Assembly: GCA_001949185.1 (NCBI GenBank)
Contig: BDGG01000018.1
Coordinates: 434,001 to 498,000 of the forward strand
DNA length: 64,000 bases
DNA from: Ramazzottius varieornatus
Lineage: Eukaryota > Animalia > Tardigrada
Reading direction: 5' to 3'
Below the pieces are notes generated by a model, which ran no database searches, was not told the origin of the DNA, and worked only from the letters and a program-made list of their open reading frames with translations. Position numbers and translations under genes: made by a program. Positions 3,098 through 63,020 of the stretch are shown one piece after another. Numbering within the stretch: the first letter of the stretch is position 1; each line of letters opens with the position of its first letter.

Positions 3098-6000
3098 ATG
3101 CCTCCTAAAGGTCGAAGTAAAGCGCAGACGGCACCTCGTCCAGCAGAGAAGCCTCGAGATGCGGTTCCCCAGTCCGCATCGCAACCCAGTACAAGTGGCG
3201 CACTGCCTGTCGTCGATCCTCTCTTGGTCGGATACCCTCACGTCGACGCCTTGATGTTGAAGGTTCGTGCACAAGCAGCCAACTCTGATATACCCAGTGG
3301 TGCTTCAGCGGCCATGGGTTGGTTGGAAGAGTTCAGTTCCAAGCTGCAAAAGATCCGGGAGAATCCGATGGCTGAAGACGTTGTTCTGCCACCGCCGACG
3401 ACGGCGCGCAAGACCGCTCCGCGCAAGACGGTGGTGCGCAAGGCTACAACGCGCAAGGCGGCTACGGAGCGAGCTGAGGCTGTACCTTCTGGAGCGAAAC
3501 GACGGACGCGGGCGGCGGATGAACGAGCACGCAAACTGGCTGAAGAAACACAGGAAATCGTCATCGTCGATGAAGTGCAGGTGACCGAAGTGATTCAGAT
3601 AGTTTCGGAGAGAATTGTAGTGGAGGAAAAGACTGGAGAGGGGGAAGAGGAAGTCAAGCCTGTGCCTGCAAAGCGACGCACAACCAGAAAGAAGTCCTCA
3701 GCCGTCAAACGAAGTCCGAAGTTAGAATCTGTTGAGATTATCATTCCCTCCGAAGCTGTGGCTAAACCTCCGGTAGTGGCAGAGCCTCCAGTGGTTGAAG
3801 CAAAGCCTGAAGAAGTTTCACAGGCAATCGTACCAAAAGATCATCCCTTGGAGGCCATCGAAGAACGTCCAACGGCTGAAGGACAGACTTCGCTGCCTTC
3901 TGCTCAAGAAGACTTAGTCGGCGACGGCGACGTCTCGATGCACATGATAACTCCTGAGCCTGCTGAGAACCCCGTGGAGGAAGCCGTTGAAGCAGGTACA
4001 ACTGAGGTGAGTGAGAAGGACTTGATGGAAGTGGAGCAAGTTTCAGGTCAAGAAGAGAAGCAAAGGGAAGGGGAGAAAGTGGAGCCTGCATCGGCGGAAG
4101 TAGAGGATGAGTGGGTGGTGGTCGATGAAAAGGGCGACAACACGCGCTTGCTGGAAGCCTTTGCTGTGGATGGAGAGAAGACTGCGTCGCAGGAGGAAGC
4201 TCGTCCCGCCGAAGAAGTAAAACGTCAGCGAGGATCGAAAGAACCGTCCAGCAAAGACAAGGGGCCGACGGTGGCCAATGAAGAGCGGAGCCGCTCGGTA
4301 GCGCTGGAACGGATGCGCGCACGCGATGCGGAGCGGGCCAAGAAGGCGGCCGAGAAACGCGAGGAACTTGAACGCGCGCGCCAAGCCAAGGTTTGTCCCC
4401 CTCTTTCCAGTTTCACTTTTACCTTCCTCCCACGATTTCATCCTCAATTCGACATACTTAAAATCTAAAAGTAATATTTCGTGCAATCCATAATCGCAGC
4501 GCAGAATGACAGGTGAAGTTTATTGTGTGCAGGTGGATGAACGACTTTCGTTTGATTTATCCTTCTTCGAAATGGCAATGTTGTCCTGATGCCTTTGTCG
4601 ATAGGCATCCCTTTGTGTATTCTAGGTGGAAGCACATCTTTTGGAGAAGGGAAAGAAGTCCAAGCTGAGCTCGACCACGCAGCGTCAGCAGGAGGCGGAG
4701 AGACGGCGAAAGGAAGAGTTGGAACGCTACATGAAGCTGGCGGCCAAACCCCTCACCGAAGGATCTCCCGTCCGTCAGACGCACTACTCGGGCATGAAGG
4801 CAGCTTCAGCCGCCAAAGCCACTACTCCATCCAAACCAAGTGCACTCTCGCTGGGCGACGTCCAGAAGACTCCACCCAAGCTGCCTAGTTGGCAAAACGC
4901 CACCTCGACTTCAACCAGCAAGCAAAGCTCGCAGACAGTGTCTCATCAACCTGCTAAAGGCTTCAAACAGGTAAGAAACATCGGAGGAGTAATCATTTGA
5001 ATATCGAGACGGAAACCACATTTTTTCGAAGGTGCCTGCTGGAACCAAGATCTTCACACCACTGCAGATGCCCAGAGTAAACGTGGATGGCCTTCGTGTG
5101 GCACAAAAGCACGTCACGGACCGCGCTGGCTCTTCCCAAAAGACTGCAGTGCCGGCAATACCCTCACTCGACAGTCTTCGTACCAACTTGACCGACAGCC
5201 AACACAAGGCTAGCCAGCCGACGGCCAGCACCAGCGCCACCAACCACTCCTCTTCCGGAGGTAGTTTTTGAGGAAATAATGAGAAACGAAAACATATGAT
5301 TCTAATAAACTCGAAAAAACTTGATTTTGGAATATCGGCGCTCGACAAAGAAACTCCATCCGATTGTTTTGTCAAATGACGCACTTTTACGTTGTTGGCG
5401 GCTGGAAGGATACGCCACTTTGCAGAGTATCTTGTCGCATTTATCTGTGGAAGTCTGCTGCACTTTTGTTGCCTATTGTGTGGTTATCTTTGCAGATGGA
5501 AATAGTCAGGAGTCTCAGCGTGGTCGAGCAATGTCACCTCTGATGCGGCTTGTCAAGAAGCCTCCGTCCGGTCTGAAGAACGGCGAGAAGGTGAAGGAAG
5601 GCGAGCCGGAAAGCGACAGCTTGGTCCGCCAGACGGCTTCCATGAGTTTGAAGGATAAAGATGACGTGAGCATGGCGGAGGCTCCTCGACAGGCAGAAGG
5701 GCTGGACCAAGTTGACAAAGACAAGGATCAAGAGACAGAAGCCAAGAAGAACATTGAAGTGCAAAAGAAGGATGAAGGGGTGAAACAGCCCAGTCTGCCG
5801 GTGGCTGCAGTCCGACAGAAACTCATCTCTCCCCGTATTATCAATGGTCAGTCCACTACACTAGTTCAAACTCCAACGCTTTACTGAATAATAAGGTTCT
5901 CTGAAAGCTTGAAAAGTCTTCAGAAAAAAAGAAACATCACAATATTTCCAGCAAGTAAAAGAGAAGACTTGAGCGCGGCAAACAAAGTGGACAACCATGG

Positions 6001-7872
6001 TTTATCCAAGTGGCGCACGTTAACAGCCAGTCATATTAAGAGCCTGCGCCACTTGGGAAAACAGTCTTGTCGAGTTTGCTGGCCCAGCTTCCAAATGGAT
6101 TTTGATTTCACTCAAACTATTTTCGAAGGATGACTTGATTTCAATTCTCCACCAAAGTCAGGGTGAAAAAATTTCATGAAGAATCAAGATCCGAATGGCA
6201 AATCTGAGAGCGAAATGTCTGAAAATATGTGGATGTCGGGTGATTTTGCAGGTGGTTGCAGCAAGGAGGACAACGATCAGCCGTTGACAGCGGCCAACTC
6301 CACCTTCATCTATGTTCCCCGCTCGGCTGATCAAGCAGGCCTCTCCACGACCAGCGACGTCCAGCCCAAGCAGCCTTCCGTCGAACTCACTGGCTCCACC
6401 TTCTCCACTTCGGCCTTCCAAGCTGCCAAGTCCGTCTTCAGCAACCTCACCAACCCTTTCTCCGCCTTCCAAAGCCACACTTACAGTGCCAAGCCTGAAG
6501 TTCCCTCTTCCTTCCACACCGAGCACTTCCCAGTTCTTCCCCAAGAGAAAGAGAAACCTTTTTCTACCTTCAAAATGGAAGAACCAACCAATAATATGAT
6601 ACCCCAACCTTCTTCTTCTTCTCACTTAGACACTCTCAAGTCGACCAATCCTTTTTTGACGTTTTGTCAAAGCGAAAAAACTTCGAAAGCTCCTTCGTCC
6701 TGTACGGCTTTCTCAGCTTTGTCTCCCAAGGGGGAAAAGCTCACTTTTTGTAATCTACAATCCAGCACTTTTGTCTCTGTTTCTTCCAAGTCCCACTTGG
6801 AGGGGGCCAAATCTCCTCAACCTTTCTTCACTGTCCATCCGGAACCCCAGAGCAATCCATCCAGTAACAGTTCCACCAATGGCTTCGCTGCAGGTACAAA
6901 AGTCAATCGGGATTTTTATCATGAACCAAAATTCAGACCTTTTTCCGGATTTCTGAATTGATTTTCATTGAAATTCTGCAAGTTTTTTTGGGATGTTTTG
7001 CTTGGGATATTTTTGGCGGAAGAATGAAGGAGGGGTTATTGCTTTTTAGTTGCTGGTCCTCCAACGGCTGTGAAGGTGGATATGCCGTCGCAGAAGCTCC
7101 TACCGACTACTTCGCACAAAGTGCCTTCCGTGGTGGAAGTTATCAGCTCGAAGCCTCCCGAGAAACACAACAGCAAGAAACGCCCGGCGGAAGACGTCCA
7201 GACTTACGGCTTGGACATCCAACAAGACGACGATACGGTGAACAAATATTTTCCTTCAGAACCAGCTCGATAAATTCTTTTCAAGAGGTTTTCCCAAAGT
7301 GGCGCAGGTTTCTGACGCTATAGACTAGAGAAGGCACGACGAAAATGAAACTTTTCGCCGTTCTTCGCCGTGGCGAAAAGTATCGTTCTCGCTTCTCCGA
7401 GACTGTGGGCGTGCGCCACTTAGGAAAACCATCTCTGAGAGTTTGTTTTTCCAAGTGGCGCAGGCTGCTAATGTCATTGGCTGGAATTATGCGCTGGAAT
7501 TATGCGCCTTTTGCCTTGACTCTAACGTTTTCTTGGTTTTATGGTGTGAAATGTAGACATCATTTTTGAATGTTGCAGGACGACGAGGACAACCCGCGGA
7601 AAGTGGTGCCGAAGTGGGCCGAGTCGGCAAACTTGTCGGCACTGATGCGCAAGCAGCTGTGTCGAGAGATCGATCTGGACATGACGTTCGAAGGGGCGCG
7701 TCCCTCAGAGAAGGTGGCTCTGGGCGCCATCTTCCAAGCTCCCGAAGCACGCTACAACAAGCGCACTTCCTCGCAGATGTGGACCCATCCTCCGCTGGCT
7801 TTGGGTGTTTACACTCCGCACGGCCATCTCAAGCATGTTAAAGAAGGCCTTGAGAATATCGAAGATGTTTAG
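3098..7872 (+). CDS. INCENP: Inner centromere protein (INCENP-like), ~7 exons
   Basis: C-terminal IN-box YGLDIQQDDDT|DDEDNPRKVVPKWAE...IFQAPEARYNKRTSSQMW; N-terminal MGWLEEFSSKLQKI resembles the INCENP-N helix; charged SAH-like stretch (RMRARDAERAKKAAEKREELERARQAK). Internal exon boundaries are approximate. Confidence 0.85.
5374..5420. repeat. Palindromic N27 element, degenerate unit (INCENP intron)
   Basis: AAATGACGCA-N27-TACGCCACTT, flank ATCTTGTCG. Confidence 0.7.
6008..6054. repeat. Palindromic N27 element (INCENP intron)
   Basis: AAGTGGCGCA-N27-TGCGCCACTT, flank GGGAAAACAGTCTTGTCGAGTTTG. Confidence 0.9.
7297..7499. repeat. Palindromic N27 element, decayed multimer (INCENP last intron)
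   Basis: Left arms 7297 and 7453, right arms 7412 and ~7490; core TGTCATTGG. Confidence 0.75.
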
Positions 7873-10694: not shown

Positions 10695-12750
<2,056 letters not shown>

Positions 12751-12797: not shown

Positions 12798-14270
12798 TTA
12801 TTTTTCCATCATGTAGTGCTTCATGGAATATTTCGAAGTAGACACGGTGGAAAGTAGTGCGTTGGAGAAGAGAAATTTGCGGAGTAAACACGAAAAGAGG
12901 AAGAAGGGCAGAAGCCAGAAAGTAAAGGCGGCGCCTGCTGTAGTCAGTCTGTGAAGGATGGTCGTCTGTACCCAGACGGGCACAACCGGGAAGTGAACAG
13001 TCACTTCCATGTGGAATGGCTGGTTGAGCTGTGGTCCTTTAACGCATATCGGCGAAGTGGTATCCAGTATAGTCCGAGCTGCAAAAAGCTAATGATCAGC
13101 AGGGTGAACAGGCAGGCCGCAGGTGGATGCGGGAATTCGTGTAGGTGAAATGAGAGCTTGGTAAAGGCAAGATCGTATTCGGCAAGATCGTTTGTTCAAG
13201 TGACGCACATTCTGGTAGTTATTGGCTCAAGAACTGCGCCACTGGGAAAAAAACGATCTTGTCGACTTTGACTGTTTTCCCAAGCGGTGCACATTTACGG
13301 TATTACTGGCTAAAGTGTGCGCCACTCGATGAGACGGTCTTTTCGACGTTGTTTGCCAGCGTCCCAAATTGTTCCTATACTATGAATTGTGCTATACCTT
13401 TTCGGAATGCTCCGTTTTGCATCAGGCTGGATAATGAGAAGTCGTTGACGCTTGAAGAGTTCATGTTGATGATCGGATCTTGCAGCGAGTAATCTTCACT
13501 TCCTTGAGGCGGAAGCGGTGAGGTTTGAACGAGGCGGAGAGACCCATCAGCGAGGAACTGTGAGCAAGGTGAAGCCGAGTTGTGCTGAATGATCGCCACC
13601 GTCGACATCCGGAAGTTGCTTCGTTGCTGAAATGGATATGAGGAAGCTTACAAAAAATTCACTCAGAACTAGTACTACAATATAAATATGTGTTTCCGAA
13701 GACCTACCCGTAAGATAAAATCGAAAAAGAGGATAAAAGTGAAGCCCACGATTCGCTCGTCGTTGTCCAAAGGAATATCCAGGGTGAGCTGAAACCTGTC
13801 GGGCTTCTTGTCCTCGTCCAAGTCTTCCTCTTTGCTCTAGAAGGCAAAGTTCGTCAACACATGATCGGTGTCATCAAAAAGCGAATGTCCTACTCGAAGC
13901 ACTGCGGGTCGGTAGGCGGAAGTCATCAGTTGGTTGTACTGTGGCATGGTACTCCAGGTCAGAACGCTACCGGAAGTTGTCTCCATATTTATCATTGCCA
14001 TTTGCTGGTACCGAACAAGAGGTTGTTCGTAGATGGTGGTGTACAAAGGCCAGATATCTTCGCGGAAAGCAAAAACAATCTGGTGTGAACTTTCAGCTGT
14101 ATCATGATGTAGACGAAAGTTGTACCTGAGTTGATGGCGAGCAAGGCAATGGGCACTGCCAGTGTCAAGGCCAGCAACAAAAGCTGGACAAGAACTGCAG
14201 CTGAGGTAAGGCTTCCTTTGTGCTCCTCTTGCACATCCTGATTATACACCGTCATGTACGCCATCTTCAT
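12798..14270 (-). CDS. TMEM231: Transmembrane protein 231 (ciliary transition-zone MKS module), multi-exon
   Basis: N-terminus MAYMTVYNQDVQEEHKGSLTSAAVLVQLLLLALTLAVPIALLAINS then IWPLYTTIYEQPLVRYQ (cf. recalled TMEM231 WLKRSSYEEQPTVRFQ); C-terminus QPFHMEVTVHFPVVPV...FWLLPFFLFSCLLRKFLFSNALLST. Two terminal TM segments. Confidence 0.8.
13198..13327. repeat. Palindromic N27 element dimer (TMEM231 intron)
   Basis: Units at 13198 (N27) and 13282 (N26). Confidence 0.85.
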
Positions 14271-19574: not shown

Positions 19575-22500
19575 TCAATGCTGATACCACGACGCAGTCG
19601 CGGTCTTACGTAGGACACGTTCAACAACAATAGTCTCTTCAGGGTTATAACGGGCATGATAGAACTCTTCGAGATCGTCGATTGCTTTCTCTTCCAGCTG
19701 AATCAGGTTCAACGGTCGTGACCGCGATTTCTGCAGCTCGACCAACTGCGCTTTCTCTTCTTCCTGAATCGACTGAAAGCTGTCTTTCAAGTTCAACGGT
19801 GCTTCAGGAAGAACTCGATCGCTTGTTGACGGCCACTGTCCGGGCGAAGTCGAAAGACTGACAGAAGGAGGCGATAAAGATGAAGACTGTGGAATACTCC
19901 AGGGAGAACTTCCAGTCCGTCCAACGCTCGCTGACTTTGACAAACTCACGCTCGGTAAAGGCAAAGGACTTTTGTTCAAGCTTCTTGTTTGAGACTGTTC
20001 TTGAGCCATCATTGCACTGAGAGAAGGAACCACCTGAGCGGAAGGAGCAGACGTTGGTTTTCCCCACGGATTACCTAAAAGCACAAACTGCATATTACAT
20101 CACGTAATTTCACACGTCATATTATATGACATCACACAATTACCTTTTGGTCGTTCATTTTTCTGCTTCTCCAGTTCTCTCAACCGAATTTCCTCCGCTG
20201 CTTTCTCGATGGCCATCTGTTCTTTTTCAAACTCAATCAGGTTCTGTCCGGTAAACTTCTTGTTACTTCGTTGTGTGCCTTTGGGAGGAGGTGTTCGAAG
20301 GTTGAGCTTCTGTGGCTGCTTGTCCACTTTGAAGACTTCCGACCGCCTCTGCTCCTCCATGATGGACGACAAGGCAGAAGGCACCGCATTCCTGTCCGTC
20401 AGAGCTTCGTGAATGGTGAGAGAAGGTGGTGAGGATGGAAGCGAGACTGAGGAAGGGGAAGGGTTGGAGCTCTCGTCGTCGGAAGACTCCCGGAAGGAAG
20501 TGTTGGGACTCCATGCTGAGACTTTCGGAGGCGTCTTCTCTGTTTTACCATTCTTTGAAGGAGCTCTGACTTCTATCTTGACAATGTTTGAAATTTCAGG
20601 ACTGACTCCACCCTTTGTTTTACCATTAATTGTTGGCTTATTTTGTTCTAAAATGTTATTGTTTTCGGTGTTTTTCTTCTTCGATTTCTTCTTGGATGAC
20701 TTGGCTTCTGAAAAGCCTCCTTCGTCGATATTCTCTTTCAGGGAGAAGTCTGACGGCTTCGGGCTTTCTTTTTCCTTCGCATGAAGGTGCTTGCTCTTGG
20801 GCGAGGCGTCGGTAGGTTTTTTCGAGAAGGACTTCCGGCTGGAAGGTGTGGGTTCGGGTTGTTCCAGCTCGCCGTCGTCCTCAACGTACTGACGAGGCTT
20901 AACTTGGCCCACGGTATCCCAGTCGATACCTGGAATGTAAATCGGGGCGATTCCACGATATGAGAAGTCAAACCGCTCATGGTAGAGAGCTGTGAGGGTT
21001 GCAACAGCACGTTGGTCCAGATCCGACAAGTGCCTGGTTTCCACAAGCTCTGAAATTAAAAAGGAAGTAAGGAATGCACCGGTCAACAGAGAGTAAAGAC
21101 CTGCATACACAGTTACTAGTACAAAGTAGGAACCAATGTATGCAGGTGGAGGAAATAAAAACAATAACGCACCCGCACACACAACCCATGTTAGATATAC
21201 GGCACATTGTATGCAGGTGCGTGAAGTGTGAATTACGTACCAGGAAGCATGAAGACCATCAGCTGCAGACAGTCTTCCTTCAGCACCGTCGCGTTGTACA
21301 TATCAGCCATCTTGAACAACGGCCACATCTGGTCACTATTCAAGAACGGTTTAAAGTAAGTCGAGACCAAGTTCCTCAGGCCATCATACGTCAAAAAGTC
21401 CGCCAGCTTCAACAGCCCCACACACTCCTCCAATGTTCTCAGCGGTTCCCCTATCGTCTTCATGTACACGAACTCGACGAACTTTAGCCCAGTCTTCTCA
21501 TCACACGGTAGTACGGGTATTCTGTTCTTGTCAGAGTCCCGCCACCTGTTTCCCTCCAGAAGGTTCTCAAAGTAGAGCACTCGGGATGTGAGGATGGAAA
21601 TGTGGGCGTTGATCGTGACACCGTCCTCGTCACAGAGGAACTTGATGTCAGGCTCGACATCCCAAATACCTTTGGCTTTCGGGTAGAAGTCATTTCTAAT
21701 GCTTGGCCAGTCAGCCAAAGTAACAACTTTATCCAACGCATCGTCGAGCGTTTTCAGAGACTTGACTTTGCCATTTAAGTCAAGAACGGCCGGATATTCC
21801 CTATCAAGATACAAAAGTTGAGACCTAAGTTAGACCCAACGAGCCCACCAAGACTGTTCAATTTCATATAGCGCAGGCTTCTAGCTGACAAACCTATAAA
21901 CGTGAGCCACTTGAGTAAATAAACAAACTCGACCAGATCTTTTTCAAGTGGCGCACGCATTTAACCAACAACAGTGCAAAACGTGCGCTAGCTGGGAAAA
22001 CTATCTCTCGTTGAGTTGACTGTTTCTTACCTTTCATCCAACTGTACAAGTAAGTCTCGGAAGACTCGGCTCCCGGTCTGGAGGAACAGTTTCTCGGTGA
22101 GCAGACTGATACAGTCGTACGTCACCAAGACGGACGGGTTCGCCGAAGGAGCCTGGCGTTCCTGTGGATTTTTCTTCGATTTGGCCCATGTCAGCCAGTG
22201 CCGGTCAAAATTACCAGACCGTTGCGGTTGGTATCGAAATGGTGTGACCAGTTGGATGGCTGCGAAATTGCGGCCACCGGGCTCGGAGAAGACCTTCGTG
22301 GCTCGCCACAGCTTAGGAATCCGCTCGGCTTTCAGAACGGTGGAATATTCGCCCTTGGCGACTTTAGCTCGGTCGGAGGCAGTCAGCTTGAGCTCGTAAC
22401 ATTCGCCGAAGCTTGTTGAGCAGAGAAGCTTATCCGAACACAAACTGCAATTGACAGATGTTCAAAACAAGCAGATCGGAAATCGTGACGATCGAGCACC

Positions 22501-46500: not shown

Positions 46501-49255
<2,755 letters not shown>

Positions 49256-50291: not shown

Positions 50292-52233
50292 ATGGTGGAA
50301 GCTGACGATGAGACACAGTTCAAGAAACTGTTCGATCTGTACGGTCTAGGTGTCGACATTGCTGACATCTCCTTCGAGCTGTTGGACATCTGTAGCGAAA
50401 ACCTCGTCGAACTCGACTCTTCCTTCACAACTCCCAACGGTCCACTTGTCCCGGAAAACACTAAGGCAGTTTCAGACGAGATTGCCTTACCAAACATCGA
50501 ACAGTTTCACCAACAGAATGACCAACAGTCTTCGAAGCCAAACGAGCTCATGTTCTCTCCCAACATGTACGCTCACGACCAGCTGGCCTTCTCCGACTAC
50601 ATGATGGTCCACAGTACCTCTGGCATGCCCGCCATGTCGGCAGATGGTCGGTTGTTCGTCCAGCCGCTCTTTACCCCACAGAACGTTTCTCACGGACAGA
50701 CGGGACACTTCAGCTTCCATTCGTTGCCTCCTTCGCCTGTCGACTCCAACTTCTTCTTCGAACAACAGCCTCAATCAGCCCCTAAAGGTCCATTGACGGG
50801 CTACCCAGCTGGAGGATCGAAGTCGTTGAAGAAGTGCAAGACGTCGCCCGTCAGTTTGACGGAGCATCGAGCTCAAGCGGCCGTTAGAAAGTACTCAGCG
50901 GACTTGGACACTCCCAAAGAGAACCTGACGGTTGACGTTGATGAACTGTGGCCTGCAGATGACAACGTCTTTTCCGATGATGAAGAGGAGGTTGAGGAAG
51001 GGGAGTTTGGGAGTTTGGATGAGGTTGGGAAAGAAGGGAAGAAAAGGAAAGGTGCGGAGAAGGTGGAGGAGAACGGAGGCACGACATACCCCAAGCCACC
51101 CTATTCTTACAGCTCGCTGGTGGCTTTGGCCTTGAAGAACAGCCGCAATGGAAGGATGACTGTACGGGACATCTATAATTTCATGTGGTGAGTTCGCTTT
51201 GACAAACGGCAGCTCGGTAAACAAACTCGATCAAGTCATTTCCCAAGTGGCGCACGCTTCCAGCCGGTAGCACTGGAAGAATACGCCAGCAGTCGAACTG
51301 GATAAGATCGATTGCTCCAAGTGGCGCAGACATTCTCTTAATAGCAATGAGGATGTGCGCCACTCGGGGGAGAGTATACTATCGGGCTCGTTTTGAGCGA
51401 CGTTCGTTTAAACTGAAGGGGTGCTTTCATGGTTGAAATCTGCGATATGTTTAAATTTCAGTAACCATTTTCCGTACTTCCGGACGGCGGCGGTCGGGTG
51501 GAAGAACTCGGTGCGACATAACCTGTCGTTGAATCCGGCCTTCTTGAAGATCGTGGGCCAGACGGGACCTGCGCGAGCTCGAACGGCCTGTCGATGGACC
51601 ATCAACCCGGACAGGTTCAATAAAGTCACGGAAGAGATTGCCAGACATCGGACCAAATCGCTCAGCCTCATCCAACAAAGCATGAGGAACCCCGGTAAAT
51701 TCATTTTCTGATTATTTTATTCTTCAAAATAACGTCCGCTTAAGGTGTAATTGTGGATGAATATTTTCGTGTTTTCTTAGAGTTGTTGAAGCAAATCGAA
51801 GAAGGAACCGTGCAAGACTTTTCCAACGCCATTAAAGGCGTCACTGTCGAAGAGAAACGTCCCGGAGACCGTCGTCGTCGCTCTCCAAAGGTAAGGCAAT
51901 GTCGATGAGGAAAACTGTAAGTTAGACAAATGTTCCCCCTGATTTCTGATGCATGAACTTAGACAATGAATATTTGTCCATATTTGGCAGAAGCCTAAGA
52001 GCCGTCCTGGTTCTCCCCTCAGCATGGTCTTGGTGGAACGTCCAGCGAAAGCAACAGCCATGTTGCCCGTTGCCAGTCGCGTTCCGCCCAACCAGCGTGT
52101 CTTCCGACACGCCAACTACGTAGCCCCGACCTGGGATGTCTACTACAATCAGAAGTCTCCCAACGGAACCAGTGGTCCACAAGGAAGCTTCGGCTCGCAG
52201 GAAAACTTCCCTCCTTACGGCAGATCTCTCTAA
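50292..52233 (+). CDS. Forkhead box N1/4 (jumu-like) transcription factor
   Basis: [33 protein letters not shown]|[31 protein letters not shown]...[15 protein letters not shown]...SMRNPE. Start codon uncertain (acceptor upstream). Confidence 0.88.
51245..51365. repeat. Palindromic N27 element dimer (FoxN forkhead-domain intron)
   Basis: Units at 51245 and 51319, both N27. Confidence 0.9.
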
Positions 52234-52866: not shown

Positions 52867-55152
52867 TCAAGAGAAAGCCTGGAGGCCAGTAATGGCTCTT
52901 CCTAAGATCAACGTGTGAACATCATACGCCCCTTCATACGTGTTAACACTTTCCAGGTTACACATGTGGCGCATGACATGGTACTCGTCGGAGATACCAT
53001 TACCACCCAGCATATCGCGACACTTCCGGGCGATGTCCAAGGCTTTCCCGCAGGAATTTCGCTTGATCAGCGAAATCATTTCCGGTACGATCCTATGAAG
53101 CAACGGGTTATCTCAGGACTACTGAAAAGAAATAGTCCCTATTACTGGACAAAGGAGGTCGACAAGATTGTTTTCCCAAGTGGCACACTTTCGTAGCGGT
53201 GCTGGCTGCAAGCGTGCGCCGCTTGGCGAAACCAACAAACTCGTCAAGATCATTTTTCCAACTGGCGCACGCTTCCACCTAATAACACCAATAACATGCG
53301 CCACTTGGAGAAACGACCTTGTCAAGTTTGCCTGCCGAGTTTCCAAATAGCTTACTTGTTCTGGTCCTTCAAGCGTCCAACTTGAAGACAAGCCTGAAGC
53401 CCAATGGCAATCTCGGACACTGAGTCAGCCAGCTTCTTCTGAACGAGCTGTGTCTGAGCCAACGGTCGTTCGAACTGTATCCGATCGAGGGTGTACTGTC
53501 TCGCGATGTCCACACAGGCTTCTGCAGCGCCCAACGCACCCCATGCGATACCATACCGAGCCACATTGAGACACCCAAAAGGACCGCCAAGACCTGCAGA
53601 AAGAGAAACTCAGAAAATGGGAGCTCGTCAGATACGCTCGACATGATTATTCTTCATGTGGCGCAAGCTTTCAGTGTTCTCGGCCGAAGGGTGCGCCACT
53701 TCGAAAATAAATCTTGTTGAGTTTTCCCAATATTTCGAATAAATTCTTGTCTACCTGTTATGGTGGGGAACATGTTCTCAGCAGGTACTCTGACGTTATC
53801 CAGAGCTATCTGTCCCGTAATGGAGGCTCGCAGGCTCATTTTACCCTTGATGGTAGGAGTGGTGAAGCCGTCCATGCCTCGCTCCACGATGAAGCCTCGA
53901 ATTTTGCCATCCGGATCGCTTTTCGCCCATACTACTGCGATGTCAGCGATGGGCGAGTTGGTGATCCATGTCTTGGCGCCATTGAGTGTGTAGGTGTTGC
54001 TCTTCTTATCCAACTTTGCCCGGGTCTGCATGCTGCCTGGATCACTTCCGGCGTTGGGCTCTGTCAACAAGAAGCAACAGGTCAAGTGGCGCATGACATT
54101 ACAGCCTGACATACATGACATGAAACGTTACAAACGGCAACCATCGAAACGAACCAAATTTGAACTTGATTAATTCCGTACTGCTAATGATAAAATAGAC
54201 TACAGTAATATGGTTATATGAATCAATCAAGTCAAGTACCTACGATATTTCAACGCTGGTTGTAGTTTGAGTTTGAGAAATTCGATTACAGTCCAGTCGC
54301 TCGAAATCCCTACCGAATTTTTTGGATCTCAGTTCAGAGCCCGCCATACATTCACCATGCAGTATGCCATGCTAAATGCCAAAAATACGTAACACAAGCA
54401 CTACACTCTGTCTTAACTGGTGAAATCAAGTAATCAACTAGTAGGTGACCAAATGTCTGAACATGGCGCGCAGTGTGGTTAACTTTGGATGATTTTCGCG
54501 TTTAAGAAATGCGAAAATTTGGTACGGATTTCGAACGACCGGACTGTAATTTGTTTTCACCTGTCAATCCGAAGCATCCCACGATCTCTCCCGTCGCAAG
54601 TCTCGGCAGAAACCTCTCTTTCTGCTCTTCCGTGCCATAAGAGTAGATAGGATGCATGACGAGGGAAGACTGAACGGACATGGCTGAACGGTAACCACTG
54701 TCGACTCGTTCAATCTCGCGAGCAAGAAGACCATACGAAACGTAGTTCACCCCAGCACAGCCATACCCTTCGATCGTCGCTCCCAAGACTCCCAGCTGCC
54801 CCAACTCCGACATTATCTCACGATCGAAGTGTTCTTTGCGATAGGCTTCGATGACACGAGGGAGAAGCTTGGCTTGGCAGTAGGAACGAAACGTATCGCG
54901 GAGGGCTTTCTCATCTTCGTCCAGCATGGACTCCAGCAGCAGGGGGTCTTTCCAGTTAAACGTTTGCTTGTTCGTCAGCTTGACGGTTCCAGTATGGGGA
55001 GAAGGTTGAAGAGGTTTGGCGGTCTGCTGGTGTGTAGATGGCTTGTCCGTTGTGGGAGAAGGAGCATCTTGTGCTGGCTTCACCTTAAGTTGCGCAAGAT
55101 GGCGTGTAGATCGTAGAGCAGAAGGAGTCCTCTTGAAAGTAAAGGACAACAT
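52867..55152 (-). CDS. GCDH: Glutaryl-CoA dehydrogenase, mitochondrial, 4 exons
   Basis: [10 protein letters not shown]; [30 protein letters not shown]; GCFGLT|EPNAGSDP; [10 protein letters not shown]; [14 protein letters not shown]; [13 protein letters not shown]; [20 protein letters not shown]. Confidence 0.97.
53178..53306. repeat. Palindromic N27 element dimer (GCDH intron 3)
   Basis: Units at 53178 and 53260, both N27. Confidence 0.9.
53656..53701. repeat. Palindromic N27 element (GCDH intron 2)
   Basis: ATGTGGCGCA-N26-TGCGCCACTT. Confidence 0.85.
54289..54546. mobile_element. Tc1/mariner-like MITE in GCDH intron 1
   Basis: ~33-bp TIRs CAGTCCAGTCGCTCGAAATCCCTACCGAATTTT / complement with 4 mismatches; TA on both sides (54287-88, 54547-48). 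Confidence 0.8.
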
Positions 55153-56041
55153 GTTGACAATGGGAACTCCGCTTTCGGTCCTTTCGTGAAAAACGGAAGA
55201 TGAAATCAGAACGCAAACGTACGTAGACAAAAGTGCTGGCAAGTGGCCTGAGTAACTTGCGAAATGTTTTCGCCAGTTTTCGTGTGAACCTGACGTCAAC
55301 ATGGCGACGCGCGAGAAGGCTTCTGATCGGATGAACCGACGCATAACGCAAACTATCGATCGGGTGTGAGAGCACCGTGTCTGAGCACCGCAGGGAGAGG
55401 GAGACCATCGCAGTCATGACACAGGCAGCGTGATAATTTCGTTTACGTCAGAGATGATTCTAACATCCAACTGTTCAAGGTCTAAGCATGGATGATTTTT
55501 GATTTCCATACCACTCATAGTGGCTTTGGTTTGGTGACACCGTTTGGTCACAGACTTTGGCAGACAAGTCTTGAAAAGTCCAAGAAGAATCCCAATACGT
55601 TACCTGCGGAAAACTGAACACAAGCTTGAAAATTCCTTTGCTAGACTCCTTTCGCCGCAAGAGTGCTCACCAGACATGCTCCAGTGGACTTGACCTCAGG
55701 AACCTGAAAGCGTCACATTCGGTCATTCACAATATCGCGATCCAACCGGAAGCCCAGAACAGATTTGCTTCTTGCAGAGGAATACGTTTTGGTTGGTTAC
55801 AACTCTATGTCGAAATGCCACAGAACGCTGAACAGACAGCAGCACCTGGATTAGAAGAAACTGGAAAAGAACAACGTAAGTATGCGACAGCATTATACGC
55901 GATAAGATAACGCACTGTAGCTGCTGAGAAAACCGGAGAATCATGCACATTGTACTTTCATCGTTGAAAGTTGATACGCTCAACATATAAAACTAAAACT
56001 TCAATATCGGAGAATACATCGCTGGCGGTAAATTAGAGTAT

Positions 56042-58359
56042 TCAGGCTCGGCGCGGTTGCTTTTGCGGAGGCTGTCCACCCTGGTTGTTCTCCACTTCCT
56101 CCTCATCATCCTCAGATTCCAAGTCAGATTCACCTTCTGCCGCGTTCTCCATCCCACCCATCGTCCGGCCACTCGACGCATCAGGCCAGTTACCACCTGG
56201 TCGTTGAGTTTGTGGTCCTGTCTCTGCATAACTCCGTTTCTGCGACGAAGATCCAGCCGAGCGACCTTCAGTCACGTCGCCGGAAGGCCCTCCTTGTCCG
56301 AAAGCCCCACCAGCAGCTGGTGTCGGAACTCCGGGTCCTACCAGCCCACAAAATGAGAAACATGGATGAACAGACGCTAAATTTCGTACTAGTATTGAAA
56401 CGAGGACGATACCTTTAGCCTGCTGCATTGCTTTTCTAGCTGCATACATGTTGGCTTCTTCCTGGGTCTTCCCGATGTTCTTCTTGTATCTTATGCGCTT
56501 GTTACCAAACCTACACGAGGCAATACAGTTCGTCCCACTTAACATGGCTTTCGAGTTCACTAGCGGCAGTAGTTAGAGCTCAGCGAACAAACTCGACCAG
56601 ATCGTTCATCCAAGTGGCGCACACTTCCAGTCACTACCGCTGAAGACGCGCGCCACTTGGGACAGCAATTATACTCGACCAGATCATTTTTCGCAAGTGG
56701 CGCACATTCTCAGCAAAACTGGGTGGAGGGGTGGGCCACTTCGGGTACAATCTACTGGAGTGTATTTGCCGAGTTGTCGGTTGCTTCCATGAACTTACCA
56801 GTTGCTGACTTGAGCCACCGTGATGTTGCACTGTGGAAAATAAGCGGAGTATCTTTTTGTACAAGTATCTTTTGCAGCTCCGAAGCAAAGACTGACCATC
56901 CACCACTTACCGATTTAGCTAGTTCTTCCTTGGCTTCTTCACTGGGATACGGATTGCTGAGATGAGAATAAAAGTACTCGTTCAGTACTTCGGTAGCGTT
57001 CTTGCTGAAATTCCGTCGCTTCCTCCTCGCGTCCAAAAACCTGAAGGACAAATCGATTACATTTTCACCTGTGGTTCTTTCGTTTGAATAATCAGAGGCT
57101 CTCTACGTACAAATGAACTCACCGAGAACGTAGTATCATCACGGCTTCACATGTCGACTGTTTGAGCTGCATTTGAATCGAGCTGAATTTCTTCTTGATC
57201 ATCTGCACCATTCGGTCCATTTCCTAAAACCATAACATTCTGTCGCGGGTTTCACAAAATGACAGAATATCGACTTTCATGTTAATGATCATTGTTGATG
57301 CGAAAGGTTCTTCATTAAATTTAAACTTGAACTGGTCACGTGAATTCAACCAGATCCTTTTCTCAAGTGGCGCACGAACTCAGCTAACAATAGTGTAAAA
57401 TTGCGCCACTGAAAAACGATCTGGCTGAAATCATTTGCAAACGTCCCAAATACTTCCGCTTACCTTTGGTGTAATCGGTCGAGTTCGGCTTTGTTCCCTC
57501 AAGAGATTCGTCACATGCGTTGTGAACTCATTACAAGCCTTCTCGTATTTCTCCAGCTCCTGGTGGTAGATCGTGCGGATCTGTGCCAGCTTCGCCCTGT
57601 ATTCATGATGCTCCATGGTCGAGCACGGGAAGTCGCCATCAGGAGAGGTCGACGCTGATGCAGCCGAGGCAGCCACTGCGGAGCCCAACGCACCACCCGA
57701 AGCATTCTTCTCCGCGCCAGCGATACCTACAAACATTCTCCCATCAGAATGACACATCCTCGGAGAGAAACGGGACGTGGACAATGGACTGGACGAGATC
57801 GCTATCCCAAGTGGCGCACGCTCTCATGGTTAGCAGATAACAGCGTGCGCCACACTGGGAAGCAAGCGAGCATACCTTCTGCAATCAGCATGTTGTCCAG
57901 CCGCATCAACTGCTGATCCGGTGGTTCGTCTTCGATGAACGTCCGCAGGGACAACGCCGTCTTGTCCTTGATCTCACAAAGGACTGCGAATAACGCTGGC
58001 TTTGACGGGTGACAGTTGAGTGCATGTTTTCTTGCCTGAGCTTCGTCGAGAGACTGCAGAGAAAAGAACCATAATAACTGGTTAATAACCTGCATACACG
58101 ACTCACAAACTCCAACAGCTGGTACGTGTACAGTGGTTCATGACTGCCGTGAAATGCGTAAAATTTGATGTACCTGGTTGGTGATGTCCATGATCTGCGC
58201 CAGAACTTGTCCGATATCCATGCCTTGCTTATCGGTGGACCCAGGCATCTGCTCCGTAGGATTGAAGGTATTGAGACTGGGATAATACTGCTGGTGCTCA
58301 GGGTAGGATCCATAGCCTGGGGATCGAATGTTGTGCAGCTGCTGGCTTGGATCCGTCAT
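56042..58359 (-). CDS. exd: PBX/extradenticle TALE homeodomain protein
   Basis: PBC-A ([22 protein letters not shown]...[13 protein letters not shown]), PBC-B ([30 protein letters not shown]), homeodomain [39 protein letters not shown]|[11 protein letters not shown]|[12 protein letters not shown]. Confidence 0.96.
56612..56741. repeat. Palindromic N27 element dimer (PBX homeobox intron)
   Basis: Units at 56612 and 56695, both N27; outer ends GAGCTCAGCGAACAAACTCGACCAGATC and TTTGCCGAGTT. Confidence 0.9.
57365..57411. repeat. Palindromic N27 element (PBX intron)
   Basis: AAGTGGCGCA-N27-TGCGCCACTG. Confidence 0.9.
57809..57855. repeat. Palindromic N27 element (PBX intron)
   Basis: AAGTGGCGCA-N27-TGCGCCACAC. 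Confidence 0.9.
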
Positions 58360-59139: not shown

Positions 59140-62100
59140 ATGTCCTCGCATCCGTCCAACATCAGCCGTCGCACTCGCTCCCGTGTCTCCGAAGCCGCTG
59201 GTGTGGAGAGCGGCAGCGAGAAGAACAAGTGTCCCATCTGCTTCGGCGACCTGACGGACATCATCGCCTACCAGCCCTGCACACACGTCCTCTGCTTCGA
59301 ATGCGCCGTCCGCAATCGCGTCCTCTGCGATCAGAAAGAATGCCCCATCTGTCGAACACAATGCGCCCAGGTATACCTTCTCCCCCTCTCTCACTTTTCA
59401 CTCTCCGAACCTTTCTTCCAGCATTGCAACGGTTTTAGGTCGTCTTAGCTGGGCTTCGGTTCAACAACGACGAACAAGACAATGTCCATCGTTTCGAGAC
59501 GCTAAGCAAAGTGGCGCAGGCACAAGGCAAGAGTGATCCCTTCTACGGGTTCCTCTTTGAAGATATCGCCATCGAGAGAGCCTACAGAAAAATCCTGACG
59601 CATGCCTGTAAGTTCTGCGATAGACCATTCAACGAGTTTCCGGAGCTGGTCAAGCATGTGCGCGATCGGCATGACCATCATTACTGCAACGTCTGCGTTA
59701 GCCACTTGATGGTAAACATATCTCATCTTACTTTGTTGATCAGTGCTGTATTTCTGATTGAAAAGTACCTTTCTGTCTTCTTGTAGTTGTTCACTTGGGA
59801 GCACAAGGTTTACCTGTACGATGAGCTGCTGCGGCACATGGAAGAAGGGGATCCGACGGATAAGAGGATACCTGCGCATCCACAGTGTCGCTTGTGTAAA
59901 TACCGCGGCTTCGATCAAGACGACCTGTACAAGCATTCGAAGAAGAACCACCAGCTGTGCTGGATATGTGAACGAACCACCAACAAAGTCGTCTTTTTCC
60001 AGTAAGAATTCTCCGTGACAAATAGGCAAACGACCGAGCTCGACAGAATTGTTTTTGTCAAGTGGCGCACACTTTCACTGTTATTCTTTAAAAACATGCG
60101 CCACTCTCAATAACGATGTTGACCAGTTCTGTGAGGAAAACTCCTTTGTTATTTGCAGTGACTTCTTCCAGCTGTATGAACACATGGCAGATTGTCACTA
60201 CGTCTGCAAGCTCTGCTCTAACCCGGCCGAAGCCAAGGTCGTCTCCTTCCTTGACGAACAGGACCAAGCCATCCACACCGCTGCCGAACACTCGGACGGG
60301 ACCATCCGACCCGACGTTCTTTTCAACTTTCAGCAGCGTGGTGCGGAACGACTAAAGGCTCGTCAACGACGTGGCGGAGAGGATCGCGTGGCCGACGAAG
60401 TCGAAAACCAAGTAAGCGACATACACCAGCAATTTTCAGAAATATGTGCTTGATCAATTGAGAGCTCGGCGAAGAAGCTTGACAAGACTGTGGTTCCAAC
60501 ACGGAACTATTAAGCTAGTAACACTGGACACTAGACATAGAGTGTGCCACTGGGTAAAACAATCACGCTCGACGAGATTATTTTCTCAAGCGGGTGCATG
60601 GTTCTAATGGGAATGTTCGGGGGCTTGCGCCACTTGGAAGAGCGATCTTGTCGCATTTCCTGTATTTCCTACACCGGTCGCATTTATCGTGTCATGTCCA
60701 TCGTTTTTTAGCGTCCACGGACTCCGCCACCTCCAAGAGACTTCACCATGAATCGCTCTCAGTTTCCGACGTTAGGAATGGACGGTCTGCCAAGTCATGG
60801 ACAGCCCACCGGAGGAGCTGCCGCCCATAACCAGTACAGCTCCGTCTCTAACAGATCGACCGAAACGGAAGTGAGTGGCGCAGCGGTGAAGAGTCAGTTC
60901 GTTCCGCCCAAGATGACGGCGGACGCATTCCCGGAGTTAGGTGGAAAGCCAGCTGCTGCCACAAGTAGCAAGAGCGAAGCTTCGGCCTCGCTATGGGCCA
61001 ACAAGGACGCCAAAGTCACCGCGCCCAACACCGAACGAACTTCTCCAAAGAAGGTAAAGGTGGAACATATTTTCGTATTGGAGGACGAAATATTCGGAAT
61101 AAAATTAAATGACAAATAATTGGAAATTGCATAAAAGTATTCGGAATAAAACTGCCACATCATTTCGAAATGTTGGTATGTCGAATTGCGTTTGGCTTCA
61201 GATGACGAGAGCGCTTCCTCCAGCAAGTGTGGCGGACACCTTCCAGTCGCAGGCGGACACTTTTCCGTCCCTCAGCGCTCCTTCCGCCACAGCCATGAAG
61301 AAGCTGAACAACGATTGGACATCAGTGCCGGTGAAGGCCAAGAAGGGCGAGAAGACGTCCAAGCCGCCGGAAACGTCCACAGCCACCAACCGATGGGATC
61401 TTCTTCCACAAGACACTTCTCCGCCATCCAGTCCAACACAGGAGAGAAGGACGGATAGCTTGAAAGACCATGACTACACCAAGAGTGCACAAACGAGTCA
61501 AGTCAACGGCGGAACAAAAGCTTTCGTCCAGCACAAACCGGGTAACATTTCTTTCCATTCGACAAATGTGGAAATACCTTTTCTAATATTTTGGACCTCT
61601 GCAAACAAACTCGGCAACATCGTGATCTCAGGGGGCGCCCGTTTTCATTGTTTTTTACTAGCAGCGTGCGCCACTTGAAAAAAACAATTTTGTTTAAGTT
61701 CGATTGTTTTTCCAACTGGCGCACGCGTACAGTGGTATTGACTGAAGGTGCGCGCCACTTGGTGGAATGATCCTGTCTAGATTGGCGCAGAATCATTTGA
61801 AAATATAAGTTTAGGATATTTTGGAAGTTAATGTTGCCGGTCGGCAGGTGGTTCCGGCGGTGGTTTCCCGACGGCGGTGTCATCCGACGCCTTTCCTTCG
61901 TTAGCAGCTCCCTCTAAAGCCAAGCTTCCGACGGCCTTCCGGACATCGGTGCCTGCTAGTGCCACCAAGAAGAAGGTGGTGCCTACCGCAGCCAAACCTT
62001 CGACACCGAGAGCCAAGAGTGAGAAAGAAGTGATCGCCGAGAGTCTCTTTAGGTCGCCGCTCAACACAAGGGACTTGTCAGACGACGATACGGGACCGGA

Positions 62101-63020
62101 ACCCACTGTCAAGGTGGTGCCTACACCCAAACCTGCTGCAGCTGTCATCAGTAAGTATCAAGCTCCAGAAACGTTCTTCCGAATTTTGAGCAAACAATTT
62201 GCGTTCTTTGTGAGGCCGATGAACGAAGCGTACAAGAGTGTCATTACAAGTGGCGCATACTTTCCGCTGATAACATGGAAATGTGCGCCACTTGAGGTAT
62301 CCATATTGTACGCCTCGTTACCCATCTTATAAGAGCCAGACACGATTACTCAGTTCGTTAGAAGTAAATTTAAGTGTCGAGGAGAACTACGGTCGTCTCT
62401 TTGCAGATGCAGCGCCGTATAAGATGAAGACGGACGATTTTCCCGGTCTGGCCAAAGCTCCACCGAAAGCCCCAGTCTATGTCCCTGAAAGACAGCCTGA
62501 TCGTGTGCGACAACAGAAAGGTAAGCTCGAAATTTAGACTTTGCTTGTGAACTGCTCGAGGTGGAAGAAAGAAGGCCGTTTTGCTGTTTCAGAGTTGAAG
62601 TCGCAGTGGGGCAACACGGTGGTCCAATACGAGACGGTCTTCACCTACGTCCCGCCACCCAACGCCAAAGAGCGCATCGTGGCTCTGCTATCGACAGTGC
62701 AGCCGCTGGAAGTGAAAGGCAGTAAGCTGTCGCTGGAGCACCTTCAGAAGGAGCTGATGGAGGAGAAGATATCGGCCTTGGAGTTTTGGATGGAGACGCA
62801 GCGCATCATGGGCAAGAAGTTTGCTCAAGTGATGCCCGAAGTCATCGCCCTCATCCCCAGTCTGACGGTACAGCAAGACCTCTTTGAAGTGGCCAAGACG
62901 CCCATCTACGGAAGCCAGCAAGTGTCCAAAGCCTTGCTGCCTTGTTCTACGTGTAGGCAAGTGCTGAAAACGGGGGCTGATAAAGAAGCTCATGAGAAGG
63001 TTCATAAAGGAGGGAAATAA
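59140..63020 (+). CDS. ZNF598: E3 ubiquitin ligase ZNF598/Hel2 homolog, multi-exon
   Basis: RING CPIC...CTHVLCFECAVRNRVLCDQKECPICR; C2H2 fingers (CKFC...HVRDRH; HMEEGD...HPQCRLC...LYKHSKKNHQLCWIC); repeated FPxL motifs; C-terminal CSTCRQVL...HEKVH. Confidence 0.88.
60060..60106. repeat. Palindromic N27 element (ZNF598 intron)
   Basis: AAGTGGCGCA CACTTTCAC TGTTATTCT TTAAAAACA TGCGCCACTC. Confidence 0.9.
60543..60635. repeat. Palindromic N27 element, decayed dimer (ZNF598 intron)
   Basis: Right arm TGTGCCACTG ~60543; unit ~60588-60635 with N27. Confidence 0.75.
61630..61760. repeat. Palindromic N27 element dimer (ZNF598 intron)
   Basis: Units at 61630 and 61714, both N27. Confidence 0.85.
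62248..62293. repeat. Palindromic N27 element (ZNF598 intron)
   Basis: AAGTGGCGCA-N26-TGCGCCACTT. Confidence 0.9.

What the first reader, a model, noticed from the sequence alone, without database searches (positions are those of the whole stretch)
5374..62293. Dispersed palindromic element with conserved GTGGCGCA arms held at a fixed 27-nt spacing
Seen: about 30 units at 21 loci of AAGTGGCGCA-N-TGCGCCACTT. By manual count the spacer is 27 nt in 24 units, 26 in five and 28 in one, while its sequence is heavily diverged (consensus CACTTTCAG-TGTTATTGG-CTGAAAGTG). Outer flanks extend the palindrome to ~117 bp (GAGCTCGGCNAACAAACTCGACNAGATC...GATCTNGTCGAGTTTGTTNGCCGAGCTC; best copy 44094-44210). 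The CpG-containing arms look better preserved than the spacer or flanks, and I found no TSD. Inference: a neutrally decaying MITE should erode roughly evenly. Arm and spacing conservation instead suggests a constrained site, such as a dimeric protein binding site, a recombination or transposase site, or a pre-mRNA hairpin. This is the best candidate here for an undescribed system.
Basis: partly seen in the sequence, partly recalled or inferred. Interest (0 to 1): 0.82.

Follow-up and report, generated by a model that had tools for sequence, protein, structure and literature searches.

The report
Old tardigrade MITE with protected motif
The palindromic repeat is real: it is an ancient small transposon (about 13,000 copies, specific to the tardigrade Ramazzottius varieornatus) with 4-bp target duplications, in which two inverted copies of one 11-12-bp motif have decayed four to five times more slowly than the rest, which suggests thousands of protein-binding sites kept by selection.

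Summary
The window (Ramazzottius varieornatus, contig 18) holds 32 units in 21 clusters. The genome holds about 13,000 units.

The element is a 123-124-bp palindromic MITE with termini GGGAGCTCGGC...GCCGAGCTCCC. It often occurs as 2-3 head-to-tail hairpin modules with an 82-84 bp period.

The TSD is exactly 4 bp and A-first/AWWT-like, which is the Sola1 hallmark.

The family is old. The best genome-wide pair is 83% identical. The element is absent from the two orthologous loci (Hypsibius, Paramacrobiotus) and three further relatives' loci examined. About 40-50% of copies lie in short introns, but the element does not supply the splice sites.

The uneven decay is real and is not an ascertainment artefact. 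Copies found with a flank-only profile still show arms at 0.84-0.96 identity, against 0.45-0.75 elsewhere. TSDs, the two units of a doublet, and non-arm columns have all decayed to about 0.5 pair identity. Arm pairs stay at 0.81.

Arm changes are not compensated, and left and right arm integrity is uncorrelated. Conservation is equal inside and outside introns. This argues against a hairpin and favours sequence-specific dsDNA recognition.

The arm AAGTGGCGC matches 8 of 9 positions of the Drosophila CTCF core. That is an untested lead.

The parts
5338..5455 (.). single MITE unit
   Evidence: nhmmer 57 bits
5969..6092 (.). single full-length unit, 124 bp between termini
7266..7494 (.). Disrupted cluster. 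One unit has its arms (7298, 7420) split by a roughly 105-nt unrelated insert. A partial unit follows at 7440-7494.
   Evidence: the insert has only 4-5 partial matches in the genome
8117..8183 (.). partial unit (hairpin core only)
13157..13363 (.). doublet (two hairpin modules); AAAT on both sides
21838..22018 (.). doublet, predicted intronic on the minus strand
23234..23436 (.). doublet, predicted intronic on the minus strand
44093..44206 (.). best-preserved single unit in the window
   Evidence: 90 bits; DNA fold -33 kcal/mol, z -4.8
44836..45011 (.). doublet
47012..47217 (.). doublet
48020..48130 (.). single unit, predicted intronic
51211..51393 (.). Doublet inside intron 1 (51186-51462) of the FoxM1-like gene RvY_18345. 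The intron position is shared with relatives, whose introns carry no element.
53146..53341 (.). Doublet inside GCDH intron 3. This is an ancient intron position, about 80-100 bp long in relatives.
53620..53724 (.). Single unit filling GCDH intron 2 (about 53594-53754). The residual intron is about 48 nt. This intron is absent in Hypsibius and Paramacrobiotus.
54070..54112 (.). half unit (right arm plus flank) at the 3' end of GCDH intron 1
56576..56773 (.). doublet
57331..57446 (.). single unit
57778..57865 (.). single unit, right flank truncated
60031..60129 (.). single unit in an intron of the ZNF598-like gene (plus strand)
60462..60658 (.). doublet in an intron of the ZNF598-like gene
61593..61784 (.). 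doublet in an intron of the ZNF598-like gene
62212..62320 (.). single unit in an intron of the ZNF598-like gene; its variant flanks are still complementary
   Evidence: fold z -7.2

Best explanation
The repeat is an old MITE specific to the Ramazzottius lineage. It is non-autonomous and of the cut-and-paste TIR type, with a 4-bp TSD, and is most like Sola1. It spread in essentially one ancient burst to about 13,000 hairpin units, landing at A/T-rich targets, often in short introns.

Since insertion, most of each copy has decayed neutrally, to about 30% difference from the consensus. The exception is two inverted copies of an 11-12-bp motif (CAAGTGGCGCAC), which have been held at about 90% identity.

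The most likely reason is purifying selection on each motif as a double-stranded DNA site for a sequence-specific protein. That protein could be a zinc-finger or architectural factor, or a protein derived from the element's own transposase. A hairpin is not the likely reason.

Shown: the element's anatomy, TSD, age, lineage restriction and intron bias, and the slower decay of the arms with unbiased ascertainment. Inferred: that selection, rather than another force, keeps the arms, and that the agent is a DNA-binding protein.
For: Real and abundant:
-. AAGTGGCGCAC occurs 7002 times, against 20 for the reversed control.

MITE anatomy and TSD:
- Termini are GGGAGCTCGGC...GCCGAGCTCCC.
- A 4-mer direct repeat is perfect in 5/25 elements, against 0-1 at shifted control offsets. 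There are no matches for k=3, 5 or 6.
- Per-position TSD identity is 0.49, against 0.275 in the control.

Old, with no close pairs:
- The best genome-wide BLAST identity is 83%.
- That agrees with a column-independent simulation.
- Pairwise identities show no over-dispersion.

Arm conservation without arm ascertainment:
- Flank-only HMM hits are followed by arms at 0.84-0.96 identity. Spacer stems are at 0.49-0.82 and the far flank at 0.45-0.75.
- Genome-wide, the flank 23-mer is exact only 12 times and within 2 mismatches 527 times. The 18 arm bases are exact 2048 times.

Neutral yardsticks, all post-insertion:
- TSD pairs 0.49 and doublet partners 0.535.
- Palindromic partners in the flank, linker and inner stem 0.52-0.60, against arm pairs 0.81.

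Not structure-driven:
- Arm pairs observed 0.814, expected under independence 0.818.
- Left and right arm mismatches are uncorrelated (rho -0.04).
- Arm identity is 0.914 in intron-called units and 0.901 in the others.

The motif has sharp edges, dropping from about 0.9 to about 0.6 within 2 nt.
Against: - No binding, accessibility, polymorphism or cross-species data for orthologous copies could be examined. Selection is inferred from rate contrast within one genome.
- Holding more than 20,000 sites under selection is demanding.
- The outer flanks carry palindromic subfamily variants. Part of the flank 'divergence' therefore predates insertion and inflates the contrast there. The linker, spacer, TSD and doublet comparisons do not suffer from this.
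- The TSD sample is small (25-28 elements).
- A published Sola1 MITE TIR also contains AAGTGG (PMC3845634). The motif may therefore have begun as a transposase site.
Confidence: 0.5

Rival explanations
1. Selfish cis-site filter. The arms are subterminal transposase-binding sites, and they look conserved only because copies with intact arms kept being mobilised or copied. The host gains nothing.
For: - This is a TIR MITE with a TSD.
- Palindromic, mutually linked TIR variants show that master elements evolved while keeping both ends matched.
- A B. mori/R. prolixus Sola1 MITE TIR contains ...GAAAGTGGTG....
Against: - TSDs have decayed as much as neutral columns (0.49 per position), so copies have not moved recently.
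- The terminal GGGAGCTC is only about 0.6-0.9 conserved among aligned copies. Termini should be at least as essential for transposition as internal sites.
- No near-identical pairs exist genome-wide.
- Frozen copies would stay in the genome and show decayed arms, yet at most about 5% of flank-anchored hits lack arms.
Confidence: 0.2
2. Structural element. The arms are kept because they form the stem of an RNA hairpin in pre-mRNA introns, or of a DNA cruciform.
For: - All 8 copies tested fold with the arm stem. DNA MFE z-scores range from -2.2 to -7.2.
- About 40-50% of clusters lie in introns.
Against: - There is no excess pairing over independence in the arms or inner stem.
- Arm mutations are not compensated: 10 double changes, 5 complementary. 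The commonest single changes, GT and AC, are left unrepaired.
- Conservation is equal in units not called intronic.
- The outer stems, which would matter most for looping out the insert, have decayed.
- There is no significant orientation bias relative to the gene strand (21/55).
Confidence: 0.1
3. No constraint. The contrast comes from residual ascertainment bias, alignment anchoring or a local mutational cold spot.
For: - Every collection method needs some similarity.
- hmmalign anchors on the arms.
- Only 351 kb of the genome could be sampled in detail.
Against: - Flank-only anchoring gives the same result.
- Genome-wide exact-match counts give per-site identity of about 0.70 for the flank and about 0.90 for the arms, with no alignment involved.
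- A G+C-rich motif in a genome with CpG o/e of 0.97 has no known reason to be cold.
Confidence: 0.1
4. Introner. The element creates new introns when it lands in exons.
For: - Two of the three GCDH introns, both carrying element sequence, are absent in Hypsibius and Paramacrobiotus.
- Elements often fill most of a short intron.
Against: - Splice sites lie 5-89 nt outside the element, at no fixed offset.
- GCDH intron 2 minus the element leaves a normal roughly 48-nt mini-intron, with the element sitting at an ATTT-type target.
- FoxM1-like intron 1 and GCDH intron 3 are ancient introns that merely received a doublet.
- Every tardigrade compared has its own lineage-specific introns.
Confidence: 0.05

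Closest known systems
Sola1-type MITEs (e.g. Sola1_NA of Bombyx mori / Rhodnius prolixus, PMC3845634)
   Same: - Small non-coding TIR element in high copy number.
- 4-bp TSD with an A...T / AWWT-like target.
- Termini start with GG.
- An AAGTGG-containing subterminal motif.
   Different: - The terminal 11 nt do not match the published Sola1_NA TIR (about 3-4 of 11).
- The whole element is one long palindrome, with a tendency to form 2-3 tandem hairpin modules.
- No autonomous Sola1 partner was looked for.
Transposon-dispersed transcription-factor / CTCF sites (SINE B2 in rodents; Drosophila CTCF core AGGTGGCGC, PMC1904468)
   Same: - A mobile element carried thousands of copies of one 9-12-bp motif across the genome.
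- The arm AAGTGGCGC matches 8 of 9 positions of the fly CTCF core.
   Different: - Here the motif comes as an inverted pair 27 bp apart.
- The motif is retained in about 90% of copies, not in a small exapted subset.
- The G at core position 2, shared by fly and vertebrate motifs (AGGNGGC), is A here.
- No binding data exist, and the presence of CTCF in this genome was not tested.
Introner elements (MITE-like intron-generating transposons of algae, fungi and some animals)
   Same: A short non-autonomous DNA element that is abundant in introns. Some host introns are lineage-specific.
   Different: Splice sites are not provided by the element or its TSD. Offsets are variable, and ancient introns are hit as well.
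Bacterial REP/BIME-type palindromic units
   Same: Dispersed imperfect palindromes in clusters of alternating modules, with a conserved core thought to be protein-bound.
   Different: This is a eukaryotic host, the element has TIRs and a TSD, and there is no relation in sequence. The resemblance is in layout only.

Membership tests
MITE (non-autonomous TIR DNA transposon) | terminal inverted repeats | tested here: met
   The termini GGGAGCTCGGCAAAC... and ...GTTTGCCGAGCTCCC are recovered at both ends of 25-28 elements.
MITE (non-autonomous TIR DNA transposon) | target-site duplication of fixed length | tested here: met
   The TSD is exactly 4 bp. It is perfect in 5/25 elements, against 0-1 at control offsets, and k=3, 5 and 6 give 0. 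Per-position identity is 0.49, against 0.275 in the control.
MITE (non-autonomous TIR DNA transposon) | small, non-coding, high copy number | tested here: met
   Singles are 123-124 bp. There are about 13,000 units, estimated from 7002 exact 11-mers and a density of 0.28 per kb.
MITE (non-autonomous TIR DNA transposon) | autonomous partner with matching TIRs | not tested
Only one flanking region (L003) was inspected, and it held no transposase-like ORF.
Sola1 superfamily | 4-bp TSD with AWWT/AWDT preference | tested here: inconclusive
   The length is met. The first base is A in 19/25 left flanks and AAAT is the commonest TSD, but ATTC, ACAG and AGGT also occur. The hallmark is as stated in PMC3845634.
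Sola1 superfamily | Terminal positions 1-11 align to a known member with at most 1 mismatch (Repbase rule, PMC4455052) | tested here: not met
   This was compared only with the one Sola1_NA TIR printed in PMC3845634 (GGACCGTTTAT... against GGGAGCTCGGC...). Repbase and Dfam were not available.
Sola1 superfamily | Sola1 DDD transposase in the genome | not testable with these tools
   No Pfam model exists for Sola (PMC5751038).
piggyBac / Kolobok | TTAA target duplication | tested here: not met
   None of the intact TSDs is TTAA.
Introner elements | element or its TSD supplies the splice sites at fixed positions | tested here: not met
   Offsets range from 5 to 89 nt. GCDH intron 2 keeps its own GT...CAG about 25 nt outside the element on each side.
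Introner elements | host intron absent from relatives | tested here: inconclusive
   This is met for GCDH introns 1 and 2. It is not met for GCDH intron 3 or FoxM1-like intron 1.
CTCF-type binding site | match to the conserved core AGGTGGCGC / AGGNGGC | tested here: inconclusive
   The arm AAGTGGCGC matches 8 of 9 positions. The mismatch falls on a G shared by the fly and vertebrate cores (PMC1904468).
CTCF-type binding site | CTCF encoded in the genome and bound at the sites | not tested
   C2H2 loci were found but their DNA could not be fetched. The literature only places CTCF in the panarthropod ancestor (PMC5094011).
Structured RNA family (Rfam) | match to a curated covariance model | tested here: not met
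   No Rfam hit at gathering score in the whole window.

The most novel reading that the evidence does not exclude
A single MITE burst seeded about 26,000 copies of a CTCF-like motif, in inverted pairs 27 bp apart and roughly one pair per gene, through the compact Ramazzottius genome. Nearly all were then retained as binding sites of an architectural or insulator-type protein. That protein could be CTCF itself with a shifted specificity, or a domesticated Sola1 transposase. If so, a transposon built most of this animal's chromatin-boundary map.
Probability: 0.15. Interest if true: 0.85.

Novelty: new variant of a known kind. Interest (0 to 1): 0.55.

Why it matters
If the arms are selected binding sites, this would be one of the clearest cases of a transposon wiring a near genome-wide set of protein-binding sites in an animal, and in a species studied for extreme stress tolerance and genome compaction. 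It also gives a clean internal test system, because each copy carries its own neutral controls (TSD, spacer, flanks) beside the constrained motif.

At the least, about 2-3% of this small genome, and a large share of its longer introns, is explained by one undescribed MITE family. Masking that family should improve annotation and intron-evolution studies in tardigrades.

Tried and rejected
- **Rfam, whole window:** nothing.
- **Metagenome scan for the arm pair:** only 8 unrelated, mostly G+C-rich (0.56-0.73) contigs of bacterial appearance, none with the flanks.
- **Element in relatives:** absent by nhmmer at E<=10 from the orthologous GCDH loci of Hypsibius exemplaris (22 kb) and Paramacrobiotus metropolitanus (22 kb). 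It is also absent from a P. metropolitanus FoxM1 locus and from two metagenome contigs of related tardigrades.
- **Subfamily explanation:** the global test showed no over-dispersion. Column-pair tests did find linked palindromic variants, but only in the outer flank.
- **'Fresh TSD / mobile lineage' idea:** an eyeballed bimodal TSD pattern disappeared in the larger set, where the distribution fits one binomial at 0.49.
- **In-situ recent duplication of doublets:** rejected. Within-doublet identity is 0.535, against 0.554 between loci.
- **Introner reading:** rejected as the main mechanism.
- **Codon-score exon caller:** too insensitive to classify single units. It was replaced by a spliced-ORF score calibrated on reversed sequence.
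- **Insert splitting unit 7298/7420:** not a longer relative of the family.
- **Synteny around GCDH:** does not extend to the neighbouring genes, so only this gene could be compared there.
- **Earlier-findings look-up:** returned nothing.
Full report
**Source**

The window is contig 18, positions 434001-498000, of a 55,842,812-bp, 200-contig assembly. A 303-aa ORF of the window is 99% identical to RvY_18346-2 of Ramazzottius varieornatus. A second ORF is 100% identical to RvY_18345. The assembly span fits the published 55.83 Mb (PMC5531438). CpG o/e is 0.97, so CpG decay is not an issue. Nothing here is human.

Yes.
- The arm pair occurs 8 times exactly in the window, against 0 in shuffles.
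- With N27 and up to 3 mismatches it occurs 24 times, against 0.27 expected.
- Genome-wide there are 2048 exact 9+9 pairs, against 0 for the reversed control.
- Iterated nhmmer from the best copy finds 32 units in 21 clusters in the window. It finds 37 units in 200 kb of contig 1.
- The 11-mer AAGTGGCGCAC occurs 7002 times, against 20 for its reversal.
- With the measured chance that an arm is intact (about 0.27), this gives about 13,000 units. That is 2-3% of the genome.

**Anatomy**

- A single element is 123-124 bp between the termini GGGAGCTCGGC and GCCGAGCTCCC.
- It is palindromic throughout except for a roughly 9-nt centre (TGTTATTGG or its complement). Both orientations occur.
- A quarter of clusters are doublets or triplets, arranged flank-hairpin-flank-hairpin-flank with an 82-84 bp period.
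- Every copy tested still folds as a hairpin around the arm stem, with z from -2.2 to -7.2.

**It is a transposon with a TSD**

- The four bases just outside GGG and just outside CCC are identical in 5 of 25 elements. Control offsets give 0-1.
- Comparisons with k=3, 5 and 6 give none, so the duplication is exactly 4 bp.
- In a second set of 28 elements the per-position identity is 0.49, against 0.275 for controls.
- The intact TSDs are AAAT (three times), ATTC, ACAG and AGGT. The first base is A in 19/25 left flanks.
- A 4-bp AWWT/AWDT duplication is described as the hallmark of Sola1 (PMC3845634).
- The printed Sola1_NA TIR does not match our first 11 bases, although it also contains AAGTGG. 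I therefore file the element as a TIR MITE, 'Sola1-like', with superfamily membership left open.
- TTAA-type families are excluded.

**Age and distribution**

- The best genome-wide match of the best window copy is 83% identical.
- A simulation with independent columns and 10,000-25,000 copies predicts a maximum of 0.80-0.81 and a 20th-best of 0.76-0.77. The observed values are 0.83 and 0.77.
- Pairwise identities among 69 unbiased units are not over-dispersed.
- The only substructure is a set of outer-flank column pairs (19/111, 28/102, 22/108, 25/105, 18/112). They vary as complementary pairs and are also linked to each other. This indicates at least two palindromic TIR variants among the master copies.
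- The element is absent from the orthologous 22-kb GCDH loci of Hypsibius exemplaris and Paramacrobiotus metropolitanus. It is also absent from three further loci of relatives.
- A scan of the metagenome collection found nothing related.

**Genomic context**

A spliced-ORF coding score was calibrated on reversed sequence. It places 38-53% of 95 clusters in introns, against null rates of 1-10%.

- In GCDH, a doublet sits in an intron whose position is shared by all three tardigrades. That intron is 263 bp here and about 80-100 bp in the others.
- In GCDH, a single unit fills an intron that the two relatives lack.
- In GCDH, a half unit ends a second lineage-specific intron.
- In the FoxM1-like gene, a doublet sits in an ancient intron. 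That intron is 277 bp here, and 89 bp with no element in a related metagenome contig.
- Splice sites lie 5-89 nt outside the elements, at no fixed offset.
- GCDH intron 2 minus the element is a normal roughly 48-nt intron, with the element at an ATTT-type target.

The element therefore lands in A/T-rich introns rather than making them.

**Uneven decay**

- With whole-profile collection, the arm columns are 0.84-0.97 identical to the consensus. The spacer is at about 0.68 and the flanks at about 0.6.
- A profile built only from the 38-nt left flank finds 65 hits. Nearly all are followed by intact arms.
- In the 51 hits at E<=0.1, the unselected far arm is at 0.84-0.92 and the far flank at 0.45-0.75.
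- Exact-match counts need no alignment. The flank 23-mer is exact 12 times and within 2 mismatches 527 times, which implies about 0.70 identity per site. The 18 arm bases are exact 2048 times, which implies about 0.90.

Three clocks start at insertion or formation and do not depend on the consensus:
- TSD pairs: 0.49.
- The two units of a doublet: 0.535, against 0.554 between loci.
- Palindromic partners in the linker, inner stem and flank: 0.52-0.60.

Arm partners stand at 0.81 on the same measure. After Jukes-Cantor correction, the arms have changed about four times more slowly than the rest.

**What keeps the arms?**

Pairing is not the cause.
- Observed arm pairing (0.814) equals the expectation from independent columns (0.818).
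- Double changes are rare and no more often complementary than chance.
- Mismatches in the left and right arms are uncorrelated, with rho -0.04.
- The inner stem shows no covariation.

Intron context is not the cause. Arm identity is 0.914 in intron-called units and 0.901 in the others, and there is no significant orientation bias.

Continued mobility is not the cause.
- TSDs are as decayed as neutral columns.
- The terminal bases are no better kept than the flanks.
- No close pairs exist.

The conserved block is 11-12 nt long with sharp edges, which is the shape of a protein-recognition site. I therefore favour purifying selection on each arm as a dsDNA binding site (confidence 0.5). The selfish cis-site filter follows at 0.2, structure at 0.1, artefact or cold spot at 0.1 and introner at 0.05.

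**Spacing**

- The spacer is 27 nt in 81% of sampled units and 82% genome-wide.
- The neighbouring 15-nt linker keeps its modal length in only 67% of units.
- Per nucleotide, length changes are thus about 3 times rarer in the spacer. The linker is rich in homopolymers, however, so this is only suggestive.

**A lead on the factor**

- The Drosophila CTCF site has 'a strong AGGTGGCGC consensus' (PMC1904468). The arm reads AAGTGGCGC.
- The mismatch falls on a G that fly and vertebrate motifs share.
- I could not check whether this genome encodes CTCF. The literature only places CTCF in the panarthropod ancestor.
- This is a resemblance to test, not a finding.

**Literature**

No paper in the library links Ramazzottius with MITEs of this kind, with introners or with this motif.

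**Verdict**

The thing itself is a new member of a known kind, a Sola1-like MITE. Its unusual property, which makes it a new variant worth following up, is near-universal retention of an inverted motif pair.

Noticed in passing
window 52870-55302 (minus strand); L059, L060: The glutaryl-CoA dehydrogenase genes of three tardigrades share only one intron position. Each species also has its own private introns: two in R. varieornatus, one in H. exemplaris and one in P. metropolitanus. This points to fast intron turnover in the phylum.
   Followed up: partly
window 54070-54560 (minus strand): The Ramazzottius-specific 477-bp GCDH intron 1 has TTGACAG both at the end of the upstream exon and as its own last 7 bases. 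This looks like a duplication, and the intron ends in a half MITE unit. The origin of this intron is unexplained.
   Followed up: partly
window 30972-31036 and 31326-31390: There are two 65-nt copies, 72% identical, of a hairpin-plus-T-run sequence 354 bp apart. No credible Rfam match was found. The only hit was a lncRNA model at 17 bits, against a cut-off of 70.
   Followed up: partly
window 42132-42498: A cluster of degenerate TGCAGTGCAGTTGCAG-like repeats lies inside or near an ORF on the minus strand.
   Followed up: no
window 7306-7412: A roughly 105-nt sequence, itself partly palindromic, splits the spacer of one MITE unit. A 45-nt core of it recurs 4-5 times in the genome at 85-93% identity, so it is a second, much rarer small repeat.
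   Followed up: partly
window 59140-63020 (plus strand): A ZNF598/Hel2-like RING and zinc-finger gene carries MITE units in at least four consecutive predicted introns. This is the densest gene-level load in the window.
   Followed up: partly
L062 (ENA metagenome contig k141_3215220) and L063: Two environmental metagenome contigs encode close relatives of Ramazzottius proteins: FoxM1-like at 55-61% identity and GCDH at 83%. They probably come from uncultured tardigrades and could serve as outgroups.
   Followed up: partly
G000 contig 1, 1478-1652: Three arm motifs at an exact 82-bp period lie at the very start of the largest contig. This is a triplet array next to a scaffold end.
   Followed up: no
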